Of a DNA stretch of 64,000 bases, positions 2,313 through 25,483 are shown piece after piece. The position numbers and the translations under genes are program-made. Within the stretch, counting starts at the first letter, position 1, and the number at the start of each line of letters is the position of its first letter. The DNA lies in the sequence record MW825358.1, one strand, 5' to 3'. The notes under the pieces were generated by a model that did not search any database, was not told the origin of the DNA, and saw nothing but the letters and a program-made list of their open reading frames with translations.

Positions 2313-2939
2313 GTGTTGACCAATCTACCGCTGCTGTGGGCCAGCGTCAAAGCCTACTACGCACATCTGCTGTTGCCGTTGAGTTTCATCGTCTTTATCG
2401 CCTTGGTTCACGACTTGTTTCCCAGCTCGCCCGGATATCTTTGGGCGCTGATCCAAACGGCCATCGTGTTGGTTGCCTTCCAGTACAAGCACCTGCGTCA
2501 GCAGCGGTTGGAAGATGTCATCATCCAACTTTCAGAACAGATCGAAGTCCAGCTGACACATTTGGACAAACTGAAAAGCGACAAACGTGCGGTACTGATC
2601 AGTAACGATCAGCTCTCTAGCTGTTTGAAGCAGCTGGAAAAAGAAAGCCGAATGACCCAGCAGTACGGGCAGGTCTTGGCATTACTGCAAAAATACCCAG
2701 ACAGTCACGGCTGGCGGCTGGAGACCTTTGGCAATCCCGGTGAGATCCCTAGCCTGTTTGTCTATATCGACACACCGTGCGGACAGCTGGTATTTGACGT
2801 GGGCCTGAACTTCAGGCGTTACACTCCTCAAGAACTGCCGGAGTATGAGAAGCAGCGCTTGAACTTCTTGCCCAGTGAGAATGAGCGCATTCTTGGGGAG
2901 CTTGAAGCATTGGAGACTGCCGATGCCCTCCCCGCCTGA
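2313..2939 (+). CDS. Membrane protein with N-terminal TM segments and a coiled coil
   Basis: Hydrophobic N-terminus, GTG start, upstream of endolysin. Confidence 0.65.
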   Translation: MLTNLPLLWASVKAYYAHLLLPLSFIVFIALVHDLFPSSPGYLWALIQTAIVLVAFQYKHLRQQRLEDVIIQLSEQIEVQLTHLDKLKSDKRAVLISNDQLSSCLKQLEKESRMTQQYGQVLALLQKYPDSHGWRLETFGNPGEIPSLFVYIDTPCGQLVFDVGLNFRRYTPQELPEYEKQRLNFLPSENERILGELEALETADALPA

Positions 2940-3153
2940 AACTGATAAGGCCGACACAGAGACCAAACGGTTCTTGTGTTTGTTGGCCTGGATCTACGCC
3001 AATGCTGGCCTGGCAGTCATTGCGCACTGGCTGGGCTTTATCGTCTTGCGTGGGTTCTTTACGCTGGCCTCGGTAGGGTGCTTTATTGCCTTTGCGTTCA
3101 TGCTTGAGTATTTGGACGGACAAATGTCCAAAGAGCTACCGCCTGAAGAATGA
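2923..3153 (+). CDS. Small two-TM membrane protein, holin candidate
   Basis: GGAGA RBS; two hydrophobic segments with charged termini; directly upstream of endolysin. Confidence 0.5.
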   Translation: MPSPPETDKADTETKRFLCLLAWIYANAGLAVIAHWLGFIVLRGFFTLASVGCFIAFAFMLEYLDGQMSKELPPEE

Positions 3154-5122: not shown

Positions 5123-5455
5123 ATGTCTGAAGTCGTCAACTGGGGACAGCTGGGACTGCGCGATCGCTACATCGATCTGCTGGCACGACAGTTAATTGCC
5201 AGCTGGGTGCTGGCAGTGTTCTTTGGTATTGGGGTGATAGGGTTTGTACTGTGGGTTTTCTATCGACCCACTCCGGCCATCTTCGTGTGTCTTGCTATTT
5301 TCGCCATCGGTGTGGTGACAGGCGGCTGGACCTTATCTGTCATCAACCGACATTTGCGTGCCATCGAGGTCTACCTCAATTTCTACGAACGCCGCCATGC
5401 GGTACGTCACCAAGTGTTCTGCCAGAAATGGTGGCACTGCTTTGGGACCCACTGA
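5123..5455 (+). CDS. Two-TM membrane protein
   Basis: Hydrophobic segments; GGAG RBS. Confidence 0.65.
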   Translation: MSEVVNWGQLGLRDRYIDLLARQLIASWVLAVFFGIGVIGFVLWVFYRPTPAIFVCLAIFAIGVVTGGWTLSVINRHLRAIEVYLNFYERRHAVRHQVFCQKWWHCFGTH

Positions 5456-5471
5456 CCTATCGTGATTGGCC

Positions 5472-5651: not shown

Positions 5652-5716
5652 TACCAATTGGTGCCTGTCTCCGTCCATGTTGCCATGCGCGACTAATTAC
5701 TAAACCACCAACACAC

Positions 5717-6889
5717 ATGAAAGAATACCTCGATTTACTACGCGATGTCCGCACCAACGGAAAGTACAAGCTCGACCGCACGGGCGTGGGCTGCTATTCG
5801 GTCTTCGGTCGTCAGATTCGCTTTGACCTGTCCAAGGGCCTGCCGGCGGTAACCACCAAGAAGCTGTTCTTCCGTGGCATCACTGAAGAGCTGCTGTGGA
5901 TCATCGCAGGCTCCACCAACAACGAAGACCTGGTCACCAAGAACGTCCATATCTGGGACGAATGGGCGCTGAAGGAAGACGAAACTGAGGCAGTGCGGCT
6001 CGATGACCAAGAACGCTTGGAGCTTTACGCCAAGCACTTGGGTTTGTCCACAGCTCGTGTGGCCGGCGAGCATCTCACTGGACTTTATCAGCAAGTGCGC
6101 GATCATTCCAAGTACTACGACATGTCCGCTGCGGAAAAGCATGGGCATGCGGTAATGGATGAGGCAGGGATTCCTCGCGAAAAGTCAGTGGTGGTACGAC
6201 CTAAGGGTGACCTCGGTCCGATCTACGGCAAGCAGTGGCGTGCCTGGGAAGGTAAGTCAGGCAAGGTCTATGACCAGCTGGCTGATGCCATTGCGCTGCT
6301 GAAGAAAGACCCGGCCTCGCGTCGCAACGTGATCTCGGCCTGGAACGTGGACGATCTGGCGCAGATGTCGCTCAACCCCTGCCATTCGTTCTTCCAGTTC
6401 TATGCTGAAGAGTTGACCTACGAAGAACGCCGGATGTTGGTCGTGGATAACTACGAGAAATGGGATATCTTTTTCGGGATTGCCTTCGATGATGACGACC
6501 GTTCTGGTCCAGAATTCAAGGACGAACACATCGAGTGGATGGATGAACATGGTGTTCCCAAGCACCGTCTGTCTTGCCAGCTCTATCAGCGCAGCGCGGA
6601 TATCTTCCTGGGCGTGCCCTTCAACATCACCAGCTATGCCATGCTGACCTACATGGTGGCACAGGTCGTGGGGATGGCGCCAGGTGAGTTCGTGCACACC
6701 TTCGGCGATCTGCACATCTATGCCAACCATCTGAAGCAGGTCGATCTGCAGTTGACCCGCGAACCGCTGCCGCTGCCCACTCTGCTGCTCAATCCTGCAA
6801 TCCAGAACATCGATGACTTCAAGATGGAAGACATCAAGATTGTGGGCTACCAGAGCCACGGAAAGATCGAGGGCGAGGTTGCCGTATAA
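5717..6889 (+). CDS. thyA: Thymidylate synthase with two in-frame insertions
   Basis: [50 protein letters not shown]. Confidence 0.97.
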
Positions 6890-7084: not shown

Positions 7085-7948
7085 ATGGACACCATTGAAA
7101 CAAATGCTCTGTTGATAGCCCATCGTCAAGTACACCATGCGCTTTTGGAAACAGAGTATCATCACGGTACTTCGCCTTCTGGCTACATTCGAGAGTACCT
7201 TGATGTCATCGAAGGCCTTAAGACAAACGATGTCGCAGAGATCCCGCTTCCGTTACCGCGATCCATCCATAGGTCATTGCCCAAACACCTGCTTGAGTTG
7301 TTCATCATGTTCTACCGCCGCGGCCTGAAGGCCGAGGTGGTGTGTGATTACAAACGACCTTCGGATCGTGATGATGAACAACACAGTCTCAACCTTTTTA
7401 TCCGCGTGGAGCGAGACGAGAGTCTCCAACCTACCTACTGGGCCTATGGTCTTGATGATGGCCTGACCGTGCTCAAGAAAATCGACCATGGGAGTGAGCA
7501 CGTGGAGGACTACGAGGCACTGTGGTTGTTGATTGACCGGTTCGGTAACAAGTTGGATGACATCATGGCCACATACGAGCTGGTGAGAGATTTGTCTGAA
7601 GGCGCGTTATTTTGCTCTTACAACGAGGACGACATCCGGCAGATGTGGTTGGACGGTACGTTGAACGAGTATATCAAGAATCTAGATCATTTGGAACTGG
7701 AGCGCTTTAAAAGTCAGCTTGGGTCAAACTTCTGCGAGGACGGCGATTACGAGGCTTTACTCACAAAGCGCATTGCTACAATCAACGGCTGGCCAACCCA
7801 GTGGTCCTATGGTCCTAACGACCTGGATCCACTGACCATCCCGGAGCGATTGAAGGTACTTCCTCTTTTGTTGGAAACCCAAGGCAGCCTGGAGAGAGCT
7901 TTAAACCAGTACTGCGATCTTAAGGCCGAGTTAGAAAAACGGTTGTAG
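7085..7948 (+). CDS. Hypothetical protein
   Basis: 287-aa ORF with AAGGA RBS. Confidence 0.75.
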   Translation: MDTIETNALLIAHRQVHHALLETEYHHGTSPSGYIREYLDVIEGLKTNDVAEIPLPLPRSIHRSLPKHLLELFIMFYRRGLKAEVVCDYKRPSDRDDEQHSLNLFIRVERDESLQPTYWAYGLDDGLTVLKKIDHGSEHVEDYEALWLLIDRFGNKLDDIMATYELVRDLSEGALFCSYNEDDIRQMWLDGTLNEYIKNLDHLELERFKSQLGSNFCEDGDYEALLTKRIATINGWPTQWSYGPNDLDPLTIPERLKVLPLLLETQGSLERALNQYCDLKAELEKRL

Positions 7949-10265: not shown

Positions 10266-11072
10266 ATGTCCCAGATCAAAACCCAAATCGACAAGCTCAT
10301 CGCCAATACGAACATTGCGGACCGCTACCGCACGATCCTGGCGCTGTATCCGAAGAACCCGCGCTACAAGGAGCTGCCGTATCACAACGCTGAGCACGTG
10401 CGGGCGGTGCTGAACCTGTTTGAGATCCTGCGCAAGCTTTCGGGCAAGGGCTTTAACAAGCAGCAGCTGAAAAACGTCGAACTGGCCCTGGCCTTCCACG
10501 ACATCAATCACAGCGGCTTTGGTGATGCCCACCAGGACGAAGAGGGTGAGACCAATATCGGTAAAGCCCTTGCTGCCTTCTACGCCTGGCAGGACGATAA
10601 GAAGCTCAGCACTGATGACCGTCACGCCGTGATTGCCTTCATCGAAGCTACGCGCTATCCGCACGACGAGGTGGCCGTGCCTGATGGCAGTCCGGATATC
10701 GATGCGTTGATCGGGCTGGTGCGCGATGCTGACATCCTCTGGGGCATGCTGCCGGGTAATGCAGAGCAGTGCATGATCGGTCTGTGGCTGGAACAGCGCA
10801 ATGCTGGTGCAGAGGTCTCCCAGGATGTCTTTGAGATCCTCAAGCGTCAGCTGCACTTCATCCGCGACTATCAACCCTTCACGGCCGCAGGGCGGACCTT
10901 CAAGAACGCCATGTTTGATCAGGCGACTCTGGCGTGGTCGCAGACAGCACTGGACTATCAGCGTCAGTTGGAACTGGCGGCACAGGTGAAAGACATGCCC
11001 GCAGCCGACATCCAGGCTTTGGCATATGCCTTGGCCAACAAGCACCGACTGGGTCGTTCCAGCTACCCGTAA
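10266..11072 (+). CDS. HD-domain phosphohydrolase with class I cyclic-nucleotide PDE-like signature
   Basis: PYHNAEH ... AFHDINHSG ... VRDAD. Confidence 0.8.
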   Translation: MSQIKTQIDKLIANTNIADRYRTILALYPKNPRYKELPYHNAEHVRAVLNLFEILRKLSGKGFNKQQLKNVELALAFHDINHSGFGDAHQDEEGETNIGKALAAFYAWQDDKKLSTDDRHAVIAFIEATRYPHDEVAVPDGSPDIDALIGLVRDADILWGMLPGNAEQCMIGLWLEQRNAGAEVSQDVFEILKRQLHFIRDYQPFTAAGRTFKNAMFDQATLAWSQTALDYQRQLELAAQVKDMPAADIQALAYALANKHRLGRSSYP

Positions 11073-11134: not shown

Positions 11135-11347
11135 ATGAAAACACGTGACCTTTCAGCCGGCATGTTCGGGTTCCTACTGATCACCAGTGGGGCTTTGCTC
11201 CTGTCGTGTCTGATCATGATGATCTGGGCGTTGGAGCTACTCTCCCAGGCCACCCCGGCTGCGGCATGGATGGCATTAGGAGTGGCGGCTCTCCAAGGCG
11301 CCATCGGTGTTGGGCTGGGGTACTACTTGGTTCACCGACTGCGCTAG
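11135..11347 (+). CDS. Small two-TM membrane protein
   Basis: 70 aa, two hydrophobic helices. Confidence 0.6.
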   Translation: MKTRDLSAGMFGFLLITSGALLLSCLIMMIWALELLSQATPAAAWMALGVAALQGAIGVGLGYYLVHRLR

Positions 11348-11390
11348 AGTCAATCCGCAGTAGATTTTTACCCACCTGCATTAGGTTGTA

Positions 11391-11525
11391 GGAGAACAGT
11401 CAGAGTAGCAAAACTGGATACAGATCGACGAGGTATGTATCAACCAGAGGATGCGGTGGGACCTTCTTGCCTGGCGGCTTGGGTCCTCACGCATAGAGAC
11501 CTGGTGTTGCTCTGACTGTTGCTCC
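11391..11525 (+). ncRNA. Candidate three-way-junction structured RNA
   Basis: 16-bp closing helix 11395-11410/11505-11520 with G-U pairs and two internal hairpins; no ORF. Confidence 0.5.
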
Positions 11526-11615
11526 CTTTCATTCAAAGTAAGTGCCTTCTTCTACTCTTCTTTTAAGAGGGGGAAATAGAGGAGGCGCACTTAACGTTTC
11601 TCGTTTTTAAGCAGG

Positions 11616-11701
11616 GCCCAAGTGGCGTAATGGCAGCCGCGGCAGACTCAAAATCTGTTGGTAGTGATACCGTGTCGGTTCGAGTCCGACCTTGGGCACC
11701 A
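11616..11701 (+). tRNA. tRNA-Leu(CAA)
   Basis: GCCCAAG/CTTGGGC acceptor, CT-CAA-AA loop, long variable arm, TTCGAGT T-loop, encoded CCA. Confidence 0.95.
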
Positions 11702-11718
11702 TTGCTTGACCGTTTCTT

Positions 11719-11894
11719 GAACGAGTGTCGTGTAGGTCTAGGCCGGACCTACGATTGATCTAACAGAGGCTCACGATAGACCTTTAGCACAGCTTGGTCA
11801 TTTATAGCACCAGATATCGAACCTCGAGTTCACTGTGTGGTCGACAATAACAGCGCCGTGAGGACAGAGAGTGAAATCCTCTCCTCGTTCACCA
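11719..11894 (+). ncRNA. tRNA-ended RNA with about 140-nt internal domain
   Basis: GAACGAG/CTCGTTC acceptor, U8, GAGAG-TGAAATC-CTCTC T-arm, A-CCA end. Confidence 0.6.
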
Positions 11895-11906
11895 TTTAGT
11901 AGCAAA

Positions 11907-11994
11907 CCGCGGGTGGTCAAATTAGGTAAAGGCAGCGGACTTAAAATCCGCCGGTGGAAACACCTTGAGGGTTCAAGTCCCTCTCCGCGGACCA
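11907..11994 (+). tRNA. tRNA-Leu(TAA)
   Basis: CCGCGGG/TCCGCGG acceptor region, CT-TAA-AA loop, variable arm, TTCAAGT T-loop, CCA. Confidence 0.95.
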
Positions 11995-12025
11995 TTCAAA
12001 ATTCCAGCCACCCGTGAGGTGTTCC

Positions 12026-12229
12026 ATGTTCGATTTCGACAGCCAAACGGATCTACCTACGCAACCGGGTTGGTATAACGTACTCATTGAAGGCGTCAGT
12101 AGTTTCATGCCGATCTATTTCCACTTTGATGGAGAGGAATGGCATCCTGATTTCTTCGAAGACGAAATTCGTGCAGGTAGAAAGTTTACGTGGTTTGAAG
12201 GAACGCGCCGTGACACACGTCCGTCCTGA
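12026..12229 (+). CDS. Small hypothetical protein within the tRNA cluster
   Basis: GAGGT RBS; 67 aa. Confidence 0.6.
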   Translation: MFDFDSQTDLPTQPGWYNVLIEGVSSFMPIYFHFDGEEWHPDFFEDEIRAGRKFTWFEGTRRDTRPS

Positions 12230-12509
12230 TTCACCACTATGTTCATCGGAGGGACTGGCGCGACAGGTCATTGAGGTCCCTGAGGACAAGTTCCTCTATA
12301 GCGACGTGATCCTTGAAAAGGTCAAGTCTTTTTTCGAAGCGCAGTCGGAAAGTAAAGCCATGGTGATTGGGGTCGACGTGTGTGGGTTTCTGTCTCGCCG
12401 CGAGGAAGGAAAATTGTTTGCCGCGTTGAGCGCGGAAGGCTTTGGTTGGACCATGGTAACATGGGATCCGAAGTCCAAGTTCACCGGGTTGTTGATTACC
12501 CGAAAGTAA
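12210..12509 (+). CDS. Hypothetical protein
   Basis: GAAGGA RBS before GTG 12210. Confidence 0.55.
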   Translation: MTHVRPDSPLCSSEGLARQVIEVPEDKFLYSDVILEKVKSFFEAQSESKAMVIGVDVCGFLSRREEGKLFAALSAEGFGWTMVTWDPKSKFTGLLITRK

Positions 12510-12550
12510 CACCTCAGTTGTGGACCGTTGCCGAAAGGCGAGAAGTTAAG

Positions 12551-12714
12551 TCAGTTTGTCGAGTGGTGGAATAGGTATACACGTGTTGGATCCCTCAGGG
12601 GTGAAGGTGCAGCCGGGAAGGGTACATCGCTCCCCGGTGCCTGACAGTGGGTGCGGCCTTAGGCCATAAGCGGGTTCGAGTCCCGCCTCAGAGTGCACTG
12701 TCCATACAAACTGA
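12551..12714 (+). ncRNA. tRNA-Leu-like RNA with expanded anticodon domain and altered acceptor
   Basis: Leu-type D-arm GTGGAATAGGTATACAC, GGCC-TTA-GGCC variable arm, GCGGG-TTCGAGT-CCCGC T-arm, outer helix TCAGTTTGT/ACAAACTGA. Confidence 0.55.
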
Positions 12715-12719
12715 TTTAA

Positions 12720-13100
12720 TGAAGTGTCCATGATCTGATGTGGTAATTCCAAGTGTAGCTGAGGGTGCAGGCTTGGATGGTCGAGACTTAAAGAACGCAG
12801 CGCCGCCAGTCTCCGACGTGATAAACCCTTGAGATCCCCCGATGACCACCGATGGTCTTGATGCCGGCTGCGGCCGGACAGAGATTAGTAGCAATCGGTG
12901 TAGGGGGTCTCTAAATTTGAATCCCTGACCAACCGTATGGCGAGGTAGGCCTCGTCACAAACCTGGGAACCTGAAGGTGGATTACCGGGCGTGCCAAACC
13001 TTTGAACTAGTGGTGTACTGTTAGCAAGACATTTGGTCGGGGCTTTGAGTGTTACCCCTACGATGGCACTGATCTTGCGATGTACTCCAAACCTTCACCC
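12720..13100 (+). ncRNA. Candidate large structured RNA
   Basis: About 380 nt with no sense ORF; several hairpins and long-range helices. Confidence 0.4.
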
Positions 13101-13123
13101 GCCGTTTTAGCTCAGTTGGCAGC
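13101..13123 (+). pseudogene. 5' fragment of an interrupted tRNA-Thr gene
   Basis: GCCGTTT-TA-GCTC-AGTTGG; acceptor strand complementary to AAACGGC at 13801-13807. Confidence 0.85.
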
Positions 13124-13144
13124 TTTTGGAATAGGATAGGTGGA

Positions 13145-13684
13145 ATGATCATTGATCTTGAAGAACCTTTCAAGTCAGTCTATTCAAAAGGCTACCTGAG
13201 AGTTGAAAGTGATGGTCGAAAATATGTGAGTCTCTACAATTGTGCAGGCGATCAAAGGTCAATCAGTTACGCGAGATATTTGTACAGCGTTCGCATGGGA
13301 TATGAGATTCCCGGTGACATTGAGATTGACCATAGAGACGGAGATAAGTCTAACGATAGTTTCGACAACCTCCGACCGATGACAATCCAAATGCATCGAG
13401 ATAAGACTTATTTCGAGCGACTGAACAAAGATTGGGTTGATCTCGTTTGTCCTTGCTGTACAGAAACTTTCCGAAGGTCTTCTCGCTATCTTAGAGATAA
13501 GAGAAGTCAGGGTCAGGTCGAGTTTTATTGTAGTCGCAGTTGCTCCACCAAAATGAACACCCCCATGAAAAAACCGCTGGAAGTGATCGAGCAGATTAGA
13601 GAACTAAAGGCTGAAGGAAAATCATCTTACTTTATTGCTAGCGCTTTAGGTGTAGCTAGAAACACGGTGATGAAGCACTGGTAA
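13145..13684 (+). CDS. HNH homing endonuclease with Zn finger and C-terminal HTH
   Basis: EIDHRDGDKSNDSFDNL HNH motif; CPCC/CSRSC; IASALGVARNTV. Confidence 0.9.
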   Translation: MIIDLEEPFKSVYSKGYLRVESDGRKYVSLYNCAGDQRSISYARYLYSVRMGYEIPGDIEIDHRDGDKSNDSFDNLRPMTIQMHRDKTYFERLNKDWVDLVCPCCTETFRRSSRYLRDKRSQGQVEFYCSRSCSTKMNTPMKKPLEVIEQIRELKAEGKSSYFIASALGVARNTVMKHW

Positions 13685-13686
13685 TT

Positions 13687-13769
13687 GCTGGGATGGCTGA
13701 GTGGCCGAAAGCACCAACCTTGTAAGTTGGTATACCACATCGTCAGTTCGAATCTGACTCCCAGCACCA
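13687..13769 (+). tRNA. tRNA-Thr(TGT) with class-II-like body
   Basis: GCTGGGA/TCCCAGC acceptor, CCAAC-CTTGTAA-GTTGG anticodon arm, TTCGAAT T-loop, A-CCA. Confidence 0.88.
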
Positions 13770-13772
13770 TCG

Positions 13773-13811
13773 ATCAGTAGGTCCTCGGTTCGATTCCGAG
13801 AAACGGCACCA
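13773..13811 (+). pseudogene. 3' fragment of an interrupted tRNA-Thr gene
   Basis: ATCAGT-AGGTC-CTCGG-TTCGATT-CCGAG-AAACGGC-A-CCA. Confidence 0.88.
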
Positions 13812-13823
13812 ATTGTTTTAAAC

Positions 13824-13943
13824 GGACCAGCAGCTCGCCCGGCGAGAGCGCAGGTACAGACGCGGAAGTAGTGTGGGTTCGATTCCCATGTCGCTTGGAC
13901 GCAATCCCCTCCCTGAGGTTAGGTTCGAATCCTATCTGGTCCA
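13824..13943 (+). ncRNA. tRNA-like RNA or pseudo-tRNA with a second T-arm nested in the anticodon position
   Basis: GGACCAG/CTGGTCC acceptor, GCTC/GAGC D-stem, terminal TAGG-TTCGAAT-CCTA and internal GTGGG-TTCGATT-CCCAT. Confidence 0.55.
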
Positions 13944-13958
13944 TCAGTGTTGTAAAAC

Positions 13959-14048
13959 GGAGAGTTGGCCGAGAGGATTAAGGCACCGGTCTTGAAAACC
14001 GACGTAGGGGAAACCCTGCCGTGAGTTCGAATCTCACACTCTCCGCCA
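13959..14048 (+). tRNA. tRNA-Ser(TGA)
   Basis: GGAGAGT/ACTCTCC acceptor, CT-TGA-AA loop, long variable arm, G-CCA. Confidence 0.95.
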
Positions 14049-14210
14049 ATTTCGTTGCGGTGACTTGATGTAGTGGGCAAACACCCGAGTGTACAAGCGC
14101 TAGAGCGGTCAGAACTCTAGCGCTTGTACTCATGGTGAGTATAAGGAGACTTAACTAACATTACTTGTTAGTCTCTCAAATCTACCTCAACACTATCGAG
14201 GAGTTTTACA

Positions 14211-15173
14211 ATGAATAACATCAACGATCAGCTGGTCGAATACCTCAGTCACCCTCTGAACATCGGTGTTGCCCGCGCACCCTTTTCGGACATGGTCTGT
14301 ACGGTACCTGGATCAGAACTTGACAAGCTATGGGATCATCCCACCGGTTACCCTGTCGGATTGCTCGAACTGAGCTATAACGAACTGACTGCGATCTTCT
14401 TTACGGGACAAGTCTTCGGCAACAATAATCGTTCTCTGTGTCATGTCTCTCAGGGCGAGAACGGTCGCGTGGAGGACCATGTCTCATGTGACGTTCGAAG
14501 CGACAAGCGTGAAGGGATGAAAGTGTCCTTTCGAGTAACGCGCCGGCTTGAACAAGGTTGGTGTAATTACGGGCTCAGTGCAAGACAGTTGGTTGTCGAG
14601 GAGGCTAACCGCACGAGCTTGAAAAACCGGATGACTTTCCGCCCCTTTATGGATAAAGAAGGCAAACCGCAGTGGCAGTTGATGCGTCGTGAGATTCTTC
14701 AGATCGAATCTTATCCACCGGCGGAAGATACCGTTCCGGCCTATCTCAACTATCTCTACAAGAATCTCGAGCGCACCATCGGGGATGCCTTGAAGGTGAA
14801 TGAGGATGGGTACTTGGTCGAGACCGGTGTTGATGGTGAGATCCAGTGCTGGTGGGAAGACGTAGTGGCCGAGATGATCGAGACGGGTCTGCAACACCAC
14901 CCGTTGGGCGTGTACAACTACATTCCTACTGATCCGAGCTTGATTGACTGGTTCTTCGAGGTTAAGGCTCAAGCCGCCAATGGTGCGTTTGATCACACCA
15001 CCAGCAGCATTGAAACGGTGTCCAAGCGCATTGCCGATGTCGGTACACGGTTTGCTGAACTGACTGAACCTTTCGTTCAGAAAGCGGCACGCGAAAATCG
15101 AGCACTAGCACGTGAGATCAAGCAGCAGGACGAGCATGGTTCTCCGTTGGACGAAGAAGATCTGGTAGACTAA
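14211..15173 (+). CDS. Hypothetical protein
   Basis: 320-aa ORF with GAGGAG RBS. Confidence 0.8.
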   Translation: MNNINDQLVEYLSHPLNIGVARAPFSDMVCTVPGSELDKLWDHPTGYPVGLLELSYNELTAIFFTGQVFGNNNRSLCHVSQGENGRVEDHVSCDVRSDKREGMKVSFRVTRRLEQGWCNYGLSARQLVVEEANRTSLKNRMTFRPFMDKEGKPQWQLMRREILQIESYPPAEDTVPAYLNYLYKNLERTIGDALKVNEDGYLVETGVDGEIQCWWEDVVAEMIETGLQHHPLGVYNYIPTDPSLIDWFFEVKAQAANGAFDHTTSSIETVSKRIADVGTRFAELTEPFVQKAARENRALAREIKQQDEHGSPLDEEDLVD

Positions 15174-16558: not shown

Positions 16559-17959
16559 ATGCTGTACAACAATCTGATTCTCAACACCGATAGTTACAAA
16601 GCCAGTCACTGGACCCAGTATCCGGCCAACACCGAAACGACGTTCTTCTACGCCGAATCGCGTGGTGGGGTACATGACCAGACCGTGTTCTTCGGCCTGC
16701 AGACGATCTTGATGGATTATCTGAGCCGACCGATCACCCATGCTGATGTGGATGAAGCCCGTGACCTGTTTGCAGGTCATGGTGAACCGTTCAATGAAGC
16801 AGGCTGGCGGTACATCGTTGATACCCATGGTGGCTTTCTGCCTGTGCGCATCCGCGCTGTGGCTGAAGGGACGGTCGTGCCGACGCATAACGCGCTCTAC
16901 ACGGTCGAGTCCACCGATCCGGCTTGCTACTGGGTCCCTTCGTACCTGGAAACCTTGCTCATGCGCACCTGGTACACCACCACGGTGGCTACTGTGAGCT
17001 GGGCGTGCAAACAAGTGATCTCCAAGCACCTGTACAAGACCTGCGATGCCCCCGAAGAACAGCTGCCGTTTAAGCTGCACGACTTCGGCGCCCGTGGTGT
17101 GTCCAGCACAGAGTCCTCGGCCTTAGGTGGTCTGGCTCATCTGGTCAACTTCCAAGGCACTGACACCGTGCTGGCCTTGGTGGCTGCCCGTCGCTATTAC
17201 CACTGTGAGATGGCAGGCTATTCGGTTCCGGCCGCAGAGCACGCCACGATCACCCCGTGGGGTCGCGCCGGTGAGGTTGAGGCCTACCGGAACATGCTGA
17301 AGCAATTTGGCCGTGAAGGTGGGATCGTCTCGGTGGTGTCAGACAGCTATGATATCTTCAACGCCGTCTCTAAGATCTGGGGCAATGCCCTGCGTCAAGA
17401 GGTGATCGACTCAGGGGCCACCTTGGTCATTCGTCCGGATTCGGGCGAGCCGGTGGAGATCGTGCTGGAATGTCTGGAGCGGATCGATGCGGCTTTTGGC
17501 CACACCATCAACGCCAAGGGCTTTAAGGTCTTGAACCAAGTCCGTGTCCTGCAAGGTGATGGGATTGATCCGGCCATGCTGGAAAAGATCCTGGAGGCTT
17601 CCACGGCACAAGGCTACTCAGCTGAGAACCTGGTGTTTGGGATGGGCGGCGGGTTGCTGCAAAAGGTCAACCGTGATACGCAAAAGTTCGCACTCAAGTG
17701 TTCGGCGGCGTTGGTGAACGGACAGTGGATCGATGTCTACAAGGACCCGATCACCGACAGTGGGAAGCGCTCCAAGCGCGGACGCCTGTCGCTGTTCCGT
17801 CATCGCGAATACGGCACTTATCGGACCTTGCGTTTGGACGAGCCGACCCCGGCTGGCTTTGACGATGTCATGGTCACGGTGTGGGAGAACGGTAAGCAAT
17901 TGGTGCATCAGACGTTGGCCGATATCCGGCTGCGTGCCGATGCGCTGCGTAGGAAGTAA
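16559..17959 (+). CDS. nadV: Nicotinamide phosphoribosyltransferase (NAMPT)
   Basis: TDSYKASH, LHDFGARG, PAAEH, SVVSDSYD, IRPDSG, QGDG, FGMGGGLLQ. Confidence 0.95.
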   Translation: MLYNNLILNTDSYKASHWTQYPANTETTFFYAESRGGVHDQTVFFGLQTILMDYLSRPITHADVDEARDLFAGHGEPFNEAGWRYIVDTHGGFLPVRIRAVAEGTVVPTHNALYTVESTDPACYWVPSYLETLLMRTWYTTTVATVSWACKQVISKHLYKTCDAPEEQLPFKLHDFGARGVSSTESSALGGLAHLVNFQGTDTVLALVAARRYYHCEMAGYSVPAAEHATITPWGRAGEVEAYRNMLKQFGREGGIVSVVSDSYDIFNAVSKIWGNALRQEVIDSGATLVIRPDSGEPVEIVLECLERIDAAFGHTINAKGFKVLNQVRVLQGDGIDPAMLEKILEASTAQGYSAENLVFGMGGGLLQKVNRDTQKFALKCSAALVNGQWIDVYKDPITDSGKRSKRGRLSLFRHREYGTYRTLRLDEPTPAGFDDVMVTVWENGKQLVHQTLADIRLRADALRRK

Positions 17960-19853: not shown

Positions 19854-19880
19854 AGGGATGTCGTCAAGTGGTCTAAGGAT
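19854..19880 (+). pseudogene. 5' fragment of an interrupted tRNA-Gln gene
   Basis: AGGGATG-TC-GTC-AAGTGGTCTAAG-GAT; acceptor strand complementary to CATCCCT at 20421-20427. Confidence 0.85.
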
Positions 19881-19885
19881 GCTAG

Positions 19886-20308
19886 ATGGGTGATATAAGT
19901 CCTCAGTTAAGCCAATACCGTCGAAGAATAGAGACTTTCAAAGAAGTCCTTGGCGGAAAGTGTTGTCGATGTGGCGGAACTGTCAATCTAGAGTTCGACC
20001 ATCGCGACCCCAATGAGAAGTATTTTACACTCACCATGGGTGTGGCCCGAAGTTATCCAGCTGAAGTACTTTTGAGTGAACTAGAAAAATGTCAGTTGCT
20101 ATGTGAGGACTGCCATCTTCAAAAAACTTTAGATGAGAGCGGCAGAGCCGAGCATGGTAGCGCTGGGATGTATCGACATCACGGTTGTCGATGTAACGTT
20201 TGTTGTGAGGCCAATAGAGAGTACTTGAGAAACTACTACGCTCAAAAAACGGCCGATAACCCAAACTACCGGCGTGAACAACGACAACGTCTGAGATTAA
20301 AACAATAG
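19886..20308 (+). CDS. HNH endonuclease
   Basis: CCRCG...LEFDHRDP...CQLLCEDCH; C-terminal HGCRCNVC. Confidence 0.9.
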   Translation: MGDISPQLSQYRRRIETFKEVLGGKCCRCGGTVNLEFDHRDPNEKYFTLTMGVARSYPAEVLLSELEKCQLLCEDCHLQKTLDESGRAEHGSAGMYRHHGCRCNVCCEANREYLRNYYAQKTADNPNYRREQRQRLRLKQ

Positions 20309-20315
20309 TTTTTAC

Positions 20316-20387
20316 AGGGGATTGGCCAAGCGGTAAGGCATCGCCCTTTGACGGCGACATGCGTTGGTTCGAATCCAACATCCCCTA
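20316..20387 (+). tRNA. tRNA-Gln(TTG), CCA not encoded
   Basis: AGGGGAT/ATCCCCT acceptor, GCC-AAGCGGTAA-GGC D-arm, TCGCC-CTTTGAC-GGCGA, GTTGG-TTCGAAT-CCAAC. Confidence 0.9.
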
Positions 20388-20394
20388 TTCCTTG

Positions 20395-20431
20395 AGGGCA
20401 TTCGCAGGTTCAAATCCTGCCATCCCTGCCA
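20395..20431 (+). pseudogene. 3' fragment of an interrupted tRNA-Gln gene
   Basis: GAGGG-CATTC-GCAGG-TTCAAAT-CCTGC-CATCCCT-G-CCA. Confidence 0.85.
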
Positions 20432-25175: not shown

Positions 25176-25430
25176 ATGTCTTCTCGTGCCCAACGCCGTC
25201 ACCACTATCAGCGCATGATCGTCAAACGCACCAAGCAAGATGCCCGCTTTGGGGTTGGTGCGCTCAACGAAGTGCAATGGCGTTTTAAACATGCTCGTGT
25301 GTGCGCACGCACGGGTGCCTTGTGCTCATGCAGTATGTGTGGAAACCCGCGCCGTCACTATGGCAACTCTCAGTCGGTCCTGACCCGTCAGGAGTTGCAT
25401 TCGAATCTGACCTGGCGCGAGGACGCGTAA
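25176..25430 (+). CDS. Small basic protein with CSCSMCGNPR motif
   Basis: AAGGA RBS; possible Zn-binding Cys cluster. Confidence 0.7.
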   Translation: MSSRAQRRHHYQRMIVKRTKQDARFGVGALNEVQWRFKHARVCARTGALCSCSMCGNPRRHYGNSQSVLTRQELHSNLTWREDA

Positions 25431-25483
25431 ACACTCACCCCTCCTGCCTGATGGTGGGAGGGGTTTATGCCCTAGAGGACATC

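What the first reader, a model, noticed from the sequence alone, without database searches (positions are those of the whole stretch)
11719..11894. 176-nt RNA with tRNA ends and CCA but no D-arm or anticodon arm
It has a 7-bp acceptor stem GAACGAG/CTCGTTC, U8, a 5-bp T-stem with a variant loop (TGAAATC), discriminator A and encoded CCA. It sits between two Leu tRNA genes, so RNase P and 3' maturation should release it. The about 140-nt interior begins with a GTAGGTC/GACCTAC hairpin and has no anticodon loop. It lacks the G3-U70 and tag frame of tmRNA. Inference: an aminoacylatable or uncharged tRNA mimic, for example a decoy for tRNA-sensing or tRNA-cleaving defences, or a scaffold RNA. tRNA scanners would likely miss it.
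Basis: partly seen in the sequence, partly recalled or inferred. Interest (0 to 1): 0.75.

Follow-up and report, generated by a model that had tools for sequence, protein, structure and literature searches.

The report
Anticodon-less tRNA-ended phage RNA gene
Between two leucine tRNA genes of the giant Xanthomonas phage LucasX lies an unannotated 176-base gene whose two ends fold like the top half of a tRNA, so the cell's tRNA-trimming enzymes should cut it out, while its middle is not a tRNA; it is built like the long-known, still unexplained "species 1" RNA of phage T4, and its job is unknown.

Summary
Window 11719-11894 (phage vB_XciM_LucasX, unannotated) has a perfect 7-bp acceptor stem, U8, a perfect 5-bp T stem with loop UGAAAUC, discriminator A and encoded CCA. 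It fills the gap between tRNA-Leu(CAA) and tRNA-Leu(UAA). None of 20,000 shuffled spacers has such a module.

It is not a tRNA and not a tmRNA. Unlike the tRNA wrecks nearby, it matches no tRNA in 50,697 phage records, and no single internal deletion turns it into a tRNA.

The body is one 9-bp hairpin plus about 110 weakly structured bases. The two syntenic relatives lack it, and no copy was found in other genomes. The only other public run holding it, guessed to be RNA, has a 168-nt contig of just this element with two changes and none of its flanks.

Best reading (0.5): a stable RNA cut out by tRNA-processing enzymes, like T4 RNAC. Phage XacN1 has oversize tRNA-ended elements too. The selected part seems to be the CCA-tipped minihelix; the role is unknown. 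Main rival (0.28): the scar of a destroyed tRNA-like gene.

The scan noted a comparable CCA-tipped mini-tRNA end on other DNA (phage AR9/PBS1).

The parts
11616..11701 (+). tRNA-Leu(CAA) with encoded CCA; upstream neighbour in the same transcript direction
   Evidence: ARAGORN; Rfam tRNA 54.6 bits
11702..11718 (+). 17-nt spacer. It would be the 5' leader of the element, and it ends in U at position -1.
   Evidence: sequence. The contig of run X2 aligns from 11715, so it includes at least 4 nt of this leader.
11719..11894 (+). the whole 176-nt tRNA-ended element (proposed mature RNA)
   Evidence: A 168-nt contig of run X2 covers 11715-11871 with two changes.
11719..11725 (+). acceptor stem, 5' strand GAACGAG, followed by U8 at 11726
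   Evidence: 7/7 Watson-Crick pairs with 11884-11890; pair probability 0.97-0.99
11731..11753 (+). 9-bp hairpin (7 Watson-Crick and 2 G-U pairs, loop AGGCC) at the place where a D-arm would sit
   Evidence: z -2.5 against shuffles. The X2 variant G11745A turns the loop-closing U-G pair into U-A.
11754..11866 (+). body of about 110 nt, no more structured than shuffled sequence. It holds the frame ARAGORN proposes at relaxed thresholds (11769-11807).
   Evidence: z -0.15; frame; no complementarity to local start regions or phage tRNAs
11867..11883 (+). T-arm GAGAG-UGAAAUC-CUCUC. G53-C61, U54, R57 and A58 are kept. Positions 55 and 56 are G and A instead of U and C.
   Evidence: pair probability 0.95-0.96
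11884..11894 (+). acceptor 3' strand CUCGUUC, discriminator A, encoded CCA
   Evidence: Four of the five LucasX tRNAs also encode CCA.
11895..11906 (+). 12-nt spacer to the next tRNA
11907..11994 (+). tRNA-Leu(UAA) with encoded CCA; downstream neighbour

Best explanation
It is a real, unannotated gene for a tRNA-ended RNA.

Proposed mechanism, all inferred:
- It is transcribed with the two flanking tRNA-Leu genes as one precursor.
- Its ends fold into a perfect 12-bp acceptor/T-arm minihelix with A73 and CCA.
- Host RNase P cuts before G11719.
- 3' trimming stops at the encoded CCA at 11894.
- This releases a stable RNA of about 176 nt.

The minihelix is the part that looks selected. It serves as the processing and stability handle, and it is the only part that proteins reading the acceptor end could engage. 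The body is a D-arm-positioned hairpin plus about 110 loosely folded bases. It carries no anticodon and no T-loop/D-loop elbow, so the ribosome cannot decode with it.

In build and genomic setting it is the same kind of thing as T4 RNAC (species 1 RNA), and it resembles in outline the oversize tRNA-ended elements of phage XacN1.

The biological role is not established. My ranking within this reading: acceptor-end mimic about 0.2, cargo acting by pairing about 0.15, no role beyond being made about 0.25.
For: Shown:
- Every structural feature is present and non-random.
- It lies on the same strand as the tRNAs, with tRNA-like spacing.
- U at -1, G at +1 and ACCA match what is known of bacterial RNase P substrates (my own knowledge).
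- It has no sequence similarity to any tRNA gene in 50,697 phage records, whereas the neighbouring wreck region hits 559 records.
- No single internal deletion yields an ARAGORN-callable tRNA at default thresholds (0 of 1,860 variants). LucasX 13824-13945 and three XacN1 elements give 10 to 379.
- The T-loop differs from the canonical loop only at positions 55 and 56, the two bases that contact a D-loop, while all 24 stem bases pair.
- The only other public run that holds it is guessed to be RNA. That run has a 168-nt contig over 11715-11871 with two changes, and nothing else from 11300-14300 except matches within or near the tRNA genes (11603-11703 and around tRNA-Ser).
- T4 RNAC sits in a tRNA cluster beside a homing nuclease gene. 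It has a canonical T-arm and a terminal acceptor-like helix and is an experimentally known stable RNA of unknown role (PMC3014915, PMC9697503).
- XacN1 has a 125-nt element made of acceptor stem, T-arm and GCCA, with a weakly structured interior and no cloverleaf in its minimum-energy fold.
Against: - The two syntenic relatives, RTH11 and metagenome contig L013, lack it. No other copy was found in IMG/VR or in 185,579 species' genomes. There is therefore no covariation or conservation evidence.
- The body is no more structured than shuffles and shows no complementarity to the targets tested.
- The X2 contig includes at least 4 nt upstream of G11719 and stops inside the T-arm. The proposed mature ends are therefore not shown, and the run's RNA nature is only a guess.
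- The same region is littered with tRNA wrecks.
- A variant T-loop and a missing elbow should make it a poorer RNase P substrate.
Confidence: 0.5

Rival explanations
1. Scar of a destroyed gene. Under this reading an older tRNA or tRNA-like gene between the two tRNA-Leu genes lost its D and anticodon arms to an insertion or rearrangement, as has happened repeatedly in this phage. Only its two ends are left around junk. It may still be trimmed by chance but has no role.
For: - tRNA wrecks lie 2-9 kb away: 13101-13811, 13824-13945 and about 19854-20431.
- Relative L013 shows one tRNA-Leu sitting inside another.
- Relatives lack the element.
- The body is unstructured.
- Positions 10-22 (UCGU GUAGGUCUA) loosely resemble a D-stem strand plus a GG-containing D-loop. 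The local wrecks break just after that point.
Against: - Real wrecks here keep canonical T-loops and hit hundreds of phage tRNA genes by blastn. This element hits none.
- No single deletion restores a callable tRNA, unlike 13824-13945 and the XacN1 elements.
- There is no nuclease gene and no replacement tRNA between the two ends.
- All 24 stem bases, U8 and CCA are intact, while only T-loop positions 55 and 56 deviate. That is not the pattern of neutral decay.
- The X2 run holds the element but none of the phage sequence flanking it.
Confidence: 0.28
2. Acceptor-end mimic with a specific role. The CCA-tipped minihelix would either soak up host proteins that act on tRNA 3' ends (for example toxins that modify or cut the acceptor end) or be charged and used outside the ribosome.
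For: - The perfect parts are exactly the minihelix, A73 and CCA.
- The decoding and elbow parts are missing.
- Phage tRNAs are known counter-defence tools (cited in 10.1101/2025.08.08.669339).
Against: - No partner has been identified.
- There is no G3-U70 or other minihelix identity element that would predict charging.
- The element is not conserved in relatives.
- The support is purely architectural.
Confidence: 0.12
3. A miniature tmRNA-like RNA: a tRNA-like domain plus an internal tag frame, AHDRPLAQLGHL*.
For: At 80% thresholds ARAGORN calls it a tmRNA, with a resume-consensus match at 11762-11779 and a 12-codon frame. The X2 change T11783C is synonymous in that frame, but that is a single data point.
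Against: - Position 3-70 is A-U rather than G-U.
- No Rfam tmRNA model hits even at E<=10.
- No pseudoknots are predicted.
- The tag does not end in the usual Ala-Ala.
- At the same relaxed thresholds ARAGORN calls tmRNAs on the other tRNA-like ends in this region.
- The real tmRNA of phage XacN1 is found at default thresholds.
Confidence: 0.03
4. Chance inverted repeats in an ordinary intergenic spacer.
For: Modules with relaxed criteria (6/7 acceptor, 4/5 T stem, G-U allowed) are common, appearing in 7% of shuffled spacers.
Against: The strict module appears in 0 of 20,000 shuffles. In 128 kb scanned it is the only non-tRNA hit carrying NCCA, and it exactly fills the gap between two tRNAs on their strand.
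Confidence: 0.01

Closest known systems
Phage T4 RNAC (species 1 RNA, rnaC, 139 nt) and RNAD
   Same: - Encoded inside the phage tRNA cluster, on the tRNA strand, beside a homing-nuclease gene (segB).
- Carries a T-arm followed by a 7-nt strand that pairs with the 5' part. It pairs 5/7 with the very 5' end, or 7/7 with one G-U to an internal CGGAACG.
- Not recognised as a tRNA and not in Rfam.
- A stable RNA whose role is still unknown (PMC3014915, PMC9697503).
   Different: - No sequence similarity (z -1.4).
- T4 RNAC has a canonical UUCGAAU loop, no encoded CCA and a strongly structured interior (z -4.6). Its 3' 91 nt look like a degenerate long-arm tRNA (tRNA-Sec model 17.5 bits).
- The LucasX element has perfect terminal pairing, encoded CCA, a variant T-loop and a loose body.
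Oversize tRNA-ended elements of Xanthomonas phage XacN1 (unannotated; L019 16857-16981, 25298-25445, 10283-10391)
   Same: - 7-bp acceptor stem plus an abutting T-arm, with CCA in two of the three.
- 109-148 nt long, lying in tRNA clusters on the tRNA strand.
- The 125-nt and 148-nt ones have weakly structured interiors (z -0.3 and -0.7) and show no cloverleaf in their minimum-energy folds.
   Different: - They have canonical T-loops.
- One internal deletion makes them callable tRNAs (10 to 379 of 1,860 variants), so they may be tRNAs with inserts.
- They share no sequence with the LucasX element.
- They are unique to XacN1.
tRNA-like domain of tmRNA
   Same: Acceptor stem, T-arm and CCA with no anticodon arm, enclosing a long internal domain.
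   Different: It has no G3-U70, no canonical T-loop, no pseudoknots and no model match. It is about half the size of usual tmRNAs (size from my own knowledge).
tRNA wrecks made by HNH-plus-tRNA cassettes in the same window (13101-13811, 19854-20431)
   Same: The two complementary acceptor strands of one gene are separated by foreign sequence, in the same tRNA region.
   Different: The wrecks contain a nuclease gene and a working tRNA. They keep canonical T-arms and match real phage tRNAs. This element has none of these features.
tRNA-like processing handles: plant mitochondrial t-elements, MALAT1 mascRNA, engineered tRNA scaffolds
   Same: An acceptor/T-arm mimic recruits tRNA-end processing to define or protect RNA ends (PMC1920247 and PMC8457004 from the search lists; tRNA scaffolds from my own knowledge).
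   Different: These are different organisms and contexts. None is a free-standing unit inside a phage tRNA array. This is an analogy of mechanism only.

Membership tests
tRNA (Rfam RF00005 / cloverleaf) | 7-bp acceptor stem with discriminator base and CCA | tested here: met
   7/7 Watson-Crick pairs, A73, encoded CCA
tRNA (Rfam RF00005 / cloverleaf) | T-arm with the canonical T-loop (UUCRANY) | tested here: not met
   The stem is 5/5 but the loop is UGAAAUC. U54, R57 and A58 are kept; positions 55 and 56 are G and A.
tRNA (Rfam RF00005 / cloverleaf) | D-arm and anticodon arm; overall model score | tested here: not met
   No RF00005 hit at E<=10. ARAGORN finds nothing at default settings or with introns allowed. 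0 of 1,860 single-deletion variants is called a tRNA at default thresholds.
tmRNA | G3-U70 alanine identity pair | tested here: not met
   Position 3-70 is A-U
tmRNA | match to the tmRNA covariance models or ARAGORN at default thresholds | tested here: not met
   No tmRNA-clan hit at E<=10. ARAGORN calls it only at 80% thresholds, flagged as a pseudo-call.
tmRNA | tag frame preceded by a pseudoknot, with the tag ending in hydrophobic Ala-Ala | tested here: not met
   The frame AHDRPLAQLGHL* ends in His-Leu. The fold prediction used does not model pseudoknots, so their absence is not shown; by eye, at best a weak 4-bp loop pairing to the start of the frame.
T4 RNAC-type stable RNA of phage tRNA clusters | encoded within a phage tRNA cluster on the tRNA strand, not itself a tRNA | tested here: met
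T4 RNAC-type stable RNA of phage tRNA clusters | T-arm plus a terminal acceptor-like helix enclosing a long non-tRNA interior | tested here: met
T4 RNAC-type stable RNA of phage tRNA clusters | sequence homology to rnaC or rnaD | tested here: not met
   local alignment z -1.4 for both
T4 RNAC-type stable RNA of phage tRNA clusters | accumulates as a discrete stable RNA in infected cells | tested here: inconclusive
   One run guessed to be RNA holds a 168-nt contig of just this element, but the mature ends and the RNA nature of the run are not proven.
tRNA wreck from a nuclease-plus-tRNA cassette | the two ends are recognisable halves of an ordinary tRNA | tested here: not met
   blastn finds no tRNA match, against 559 records for the neighbouring wrecks; deletion test
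tRNA wreck from a nuclease-plus-tRNA cassette | a nuclease gene and/or a replacement tRNA between the halves | tested here: not met
   Only 141 nt lie between the acceptor 5' strand and the T-arm, with no gene in them.
Bacterial Y RNA / YrlA and other catalogued tRNA-like RNAs | match to an Rfam model | tested here: not met
   No hit of any of 4,227 families on 11702-11906 at E<=10

The most novel reading that the evidence does not exclude
A phage-made, anticodon-less acceptor-end mimic. The CCA-tipped minihelix would be produced alongside the phage tRNAs and would be invisible to decoding and to factors that read the tRNA elbow. It would work either as a decoy for host defence enzymes that modify or cut tRNA 3' ends, or as a dedicated aminoacyl carrier for a reaction outside the ribosome. 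Its variant T-loop would also spare its gene from homing nucleases that recognise the GGTTCRANTCC T-arm motif, as T4 SegB does (PMC2330249).
Probability: 0.12. Interest if true: 0.85.

Novelty: new variant of a known kind. Interest (0 to 1): 0.48.

Why it matters
Phage tRNA clusters are now seen as counter-defence loci, yet the non-tRNA RNAs inside them have had no explanation since T4 RNAC and RNAD were described decades ago.

This element, together with the XacN1 elements, suggests that oversize tRNA-ended RNAs recur in unrelated phages and are invisible to standard annotation. The LucasX case is the cleanest of them. Only the acceptor/T minihelix and CCA are perfect, and everything a ribosome would need is gone. 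That points to the acceptor end as the working part.

If the RNA is shown to accumulate, it gives a simple, deletable test case for what such RNAs do. It would also be a natural counterpart of the engineered tRNA scaffold.

Tried and rejected
- **Homologue search.**
  - blastn against 50,697 phage records gave only 25-29-nt chance matches. One of them, in phage Epa43, was checked and is not a tRNA.
  - Exact patterns in IMG/VR gave two chance hits in coding DNA with no tRNA-like fold and no interior match.
  - Two exact 24-mers in 185,579 species' genomes gave nothing.
  - Flanking protein LUCX_147 gave nothing in IMG/VR and one metagenome contig, L013, which lacks the element.
  - LUCX_146 has no homologue.
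  - Exact-protein look-ups found only LucasX itself and what appears to be its own sequencing run (a 3,050-nt contig, as in run X1).
- **Hidden tRNA.** I tried ARAGORN with introns allowed and with relaxed thresholds and exhaustive single deletions. Nothing appears at default thresholds.
- **tmRNA.** Rejected; see the membership test.
- **Similarity to local or other tRNAs and tRNA-like elements.** None.
- **Cargo acting by pairing.** There is no above-background complementarity to 40 local start regions or to the five phage tRNAs, and no long antisense match in the LucasX or RTH11 genomes.
- **Leader-peptide idea**, prompted by earlier scan notes. The only frame has two UUA codons but no start codon or ribosome-binding site, so I dropped it.
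- **Possible inverted T-arm remnant.** GGTTCGATATC on the minus strand at about 11812-11822 has a chance probability of roughly 0.1, so it is not significant.
- **Neighbouring proteins.** Pfam finds nothing for six of them.
- **Promoters and terminators.** The sigma-70 and terminator scans are uninformative.
- **Whole-genome file.** Not available for this window.

Full report
**Where it lies.** The window is part of Xanthomonas jumbo phage vB_XciM_LucasX, MW825358 (window position = record position minus 124,000). The published annotation and paper list five tRNAs and nothing at 11719-11894. All genes around it run on the + strand.

- The sequence shows GAACGAG at 11719-11725 pairing 7/7 with CTCGTTC at 11884-11890.
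- T follows at 11726.
- The T-arm GAGAG-TGAAATC-CTCTC lies at 11867-11883, directly next to the acceptor 3' strand. Then come A and CCA.
- The element fills the gap between tRNA-Leu(CAA) at 11616-11701 and tRNA-Leu(UAA) at 11907-11994, leaving spacers of 17 and 12 nt.
- Both neighbours also encode CCA, and the base before G11719 is U.
- I scanned both strands of the window for the strict module: 7/7 acceptor, 5/5 T stem, 7-nt loop, NCCA. It returned only four true tRNAs and this element. Without the CCA requirement there were six further hits.
- None of 20,000 dinucleotide-preserving shuffles of the 205-nt spacer contains the strict module.
- The minimum-energy fold forms the acceptor stem, the T stem and the 9-bp hairpin at 11731-11753 without any constraint. 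Their pair probabilities are about 0.9 or more, also when the flanking tRNAs are included.

**What it is not.**
- It is not a tRNA. The Rfam tRNA model gives no hit even at E<=10. ARAGORN finds nothing at default settings or with introns allowed.
- It is not a tmRNA. Pair 3-70 is A-U, no tmRNA model hits, and the T-loop is not canonical.
  - ARAGORN calls a tmRNA with tag AHDRPLAQLGHL* only at 80% thresholds. At those thresholds it also calls tmRNAs on the other tRNA-like ends in the region.
  - The genuine tmRNA of phage XacN1 is found at default settings.

**Is it just another tRNA wreck?** The region is full of wrecks.
- Earlier notes of this scan describe HNH-plus-tRNA cassettes inside destroyed tRNA genes at 13101-13811 and 19854-20431. 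I saw the halves myself.
- A further pile of T-arm fragments lies at 13770-13945.
- In metagenome relative L013, one tRNA-Leu sits inside another.

I therefore ran three tests.
1. **blastn control.** The wreck region 13770-13950 matches 559 phage records, the listed matches lying in tRNA genes. The 201 nt around the element match nothing but 25-29-nt chance hits (one was checked).
2. **Exhaustive single internal deletions.**
   - No variant of this element is called a tRNA by ARAGORN at default thresholds (0 of 1,860).
   - LucasX 13824-13945 gives 53, and three oversize XacN1 elements give 10, 303 and 379.
   - T4 RNAC also gives 0.
3. **Pattern of deviation.** All 24 stem bases, U8 and CCA are intact, as are T-loop positions G53-C61, U54, R57 and A58. 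Only positions 55 and 56 differ, and these are the two bases that dock onto a D-loop. Neutral decay should not be this selective.

These results argue against a recently broken ordinary tRNA. They do not exclude an older scar of an unusual tRNA-like gene.

**The body.**
- Positions 36-147 are no more stable than shuffles (z -0.15). Only the hairpin stands out (z -2.5).
- There is no above-background complementarity to 40 local translation start regions or to the five phage tRNAs.
- There is no long antisense match in the LucasX or RTH11 genomes.

**Relatives.**
- Phage RTH11 is the only DNA-level relative among phage records. At the syntenic place it has one tRNA-Leu(CAA) followed by a CYTH gene.
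- Metagenome contig L013 has tRNA-Leu(CAA) followed by tRNA-Ser(GGA).
- Neither has the element or tRNA-Leu(UAA).
- No copy exists in IMG/VR or in the genome collection for the patterns tried.
- The element is therefore lineage-specific, and covariation cannot be assessed.

**A second, independent sighting.** Besides the phage's own sequencing run, one public run (X2) holds words of this stretch. Its type is guessed to be RNA and it comes from another organism label and study.
- When laid on 11300-14300, it gives one 168-nt contig covering 11715-11871 with two changes.
- There is no coverage of the unique phage sequence on either side. The only other matches lie within or near the tRNA genes: a low depth in the tRNA-Leu(CAA) bin, and pieces 12-16 letters different around tRNA-Ser.
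- G11745A converts the loop-closing U-G pair of the hairpin into U-A. T11783C lies in the loose body.
- A contig that almost coincides with the element and has empty flanks is what an abundant small RNA would give in a thin metatranscriptome. A randomly placed DNA fragment would do so only about 2-5% of the time by my estimate.
- Caveats: the library type is a guess, contigs have no direction, the contig includes at least 4 nt of leader, and it stops inside the T-arm. The mature ends are not shown.

**Closest known.**
- T4 encodes RNAC (139 nt) and RNAD (119 nt) directly after tRNA-Arg, next to the homing nuclease gene segB.
- RNAC ends in a canonical T-arm plus a 7-nt strand. That strand pairs with the 5' end (5/7) or with an internal CGGAACG (7/7 with one G-U).
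- RNAC is in no Rfam family. Its role is still called unknown (PMC3014915, PMC9697503).
- Running my module scan on the tRNA region of the unrelated Xanthomonas phage XacN1 turned up three unannotated oversize tRNA-ended elements. One is 125 nt long, with acceptor stem, T-arm, GCCA, a weakly structured interior and no cloverleaf in its minimum-energy fold.
- None of these shares sequence with the LucasX element, and the 125-nt XacN1 element is unique to XacN1.
- The kind recurs, but each instance is idiosyncratic.
- T4 SegB recognises the T-arm motif GGTTCRANTCC (PMC2330249). A variant T-loop would make such a gene a poor target for nucleases of that type. This is a possible reason for the loop's divergence, but it is only an inference.

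**Verdict.** This is a real, unannotated, tRNA-ended element.
- Most likely (0.5) it is excised by tRNA-processing enzymes as a stable RNA of the T4 RNAC kind, with the CCA-tipped minihelix as the selected part.
- Its role is unknown.
- The main rival (0.28) is a scar of a destroyed tRNA-like gene.
- Shown here: the structure, its non-randomness, the lack of tRNA and tmRNA membership, its absence from relatives, and the second sighting.
- Inferred: transcription, RNase P cleavage, the CCA end, stability and any function.

Noticed in passing
window 13812-13945: A second acceptor-closed oversize element: GGACCAG/CTGGTCC, 122 nt, with a D-arm and a T-arm (TTCGAAT loop, one U-U mismatch) and no CCA. 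It encloses the T-arm and acceptor 3' strand of yet another tRNA (GTGGG-TTCGATT-CCCAT, then GTCGCTT). One internal deletion makes it a callable tRNA (53 of 1,860 variants). It looks like a nested pile of tRNA wrecks next to the already noted cassette at 13101-13811.
   Followed up: partly
window 12557-12700; RTH11 locus L002 about 7190-7340: A conserved structured RNA of about 145 nt lies downstream of LUCX_147 and is shared by LucasX and RTH11. Two sequences already give 4 compensatory pairs. It is absent from metagenome relative L013 and has no Rfam hit. It carries a tRNA-Leu-like D-arm (GGUGGAAUAGGUAUAC) and a canonical T-arm, but its closing helix is not in tRNA geometry.
   Followed up: partly
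L019 (XacN1 AP018399.1 record 20000-66000): 10283-10391, 16857-16981, 25298-25445, 17202-17622: Three unannotated oversize tRNA-ended elements (109, 125 and 148 nt) and an unannotated tmRNA (tag ANANTFDYALAA, found by ARAGORN at default settings) lie in gene-free gaps of the XacN1 tRNA clusters.
   Followed up: partly
L013 (JACCDR010370640.1) 953-1088: A LucasX-type tRNA-Leu(CAA) sits between the 5' part (CCGGAAGTGGCGGAATTGGTAG) and the last 8 nt (CCGGACCA) of an RTH11-type tRNA-Leu(CAA). No nuclease gene is present, so this is a tRNA-in-tRNA replacement without a visible cassette enzyme.
   Followed up: partly
L002 (RTH11 OQ790161.1) 5906-5990: tRNA-Leu(CAA) is not annotated in RTH11. The annotated CDS WJJ54956 (locus 5708-5956) overlaps it.
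   Followed up: no
window 11380-11530; L002 about 5300-5470; L013 about 510-700: A long hairpin-closed non-coding stretch of about 150 nt lies upstream of the tRNA-Leu gene at the same place in all three relatives. The sequence differs, but each has a long closing stem.
   Followed up: no
L014 (T4 NC_000866) 2911-3001, minus strand: The 3' 91 nt of T4 RNAC can close with a 7-bp acceptor-like helix (CGGAACG/CGUUUCG, one G-U) next to its canonical T-arm. They give a sub-threshold tRNA-Sec model hit (17.5 bits). RNAC may therefore be a degenerate long-arm tRNA with a 46-nt 5' extension.
   Followed up: partly
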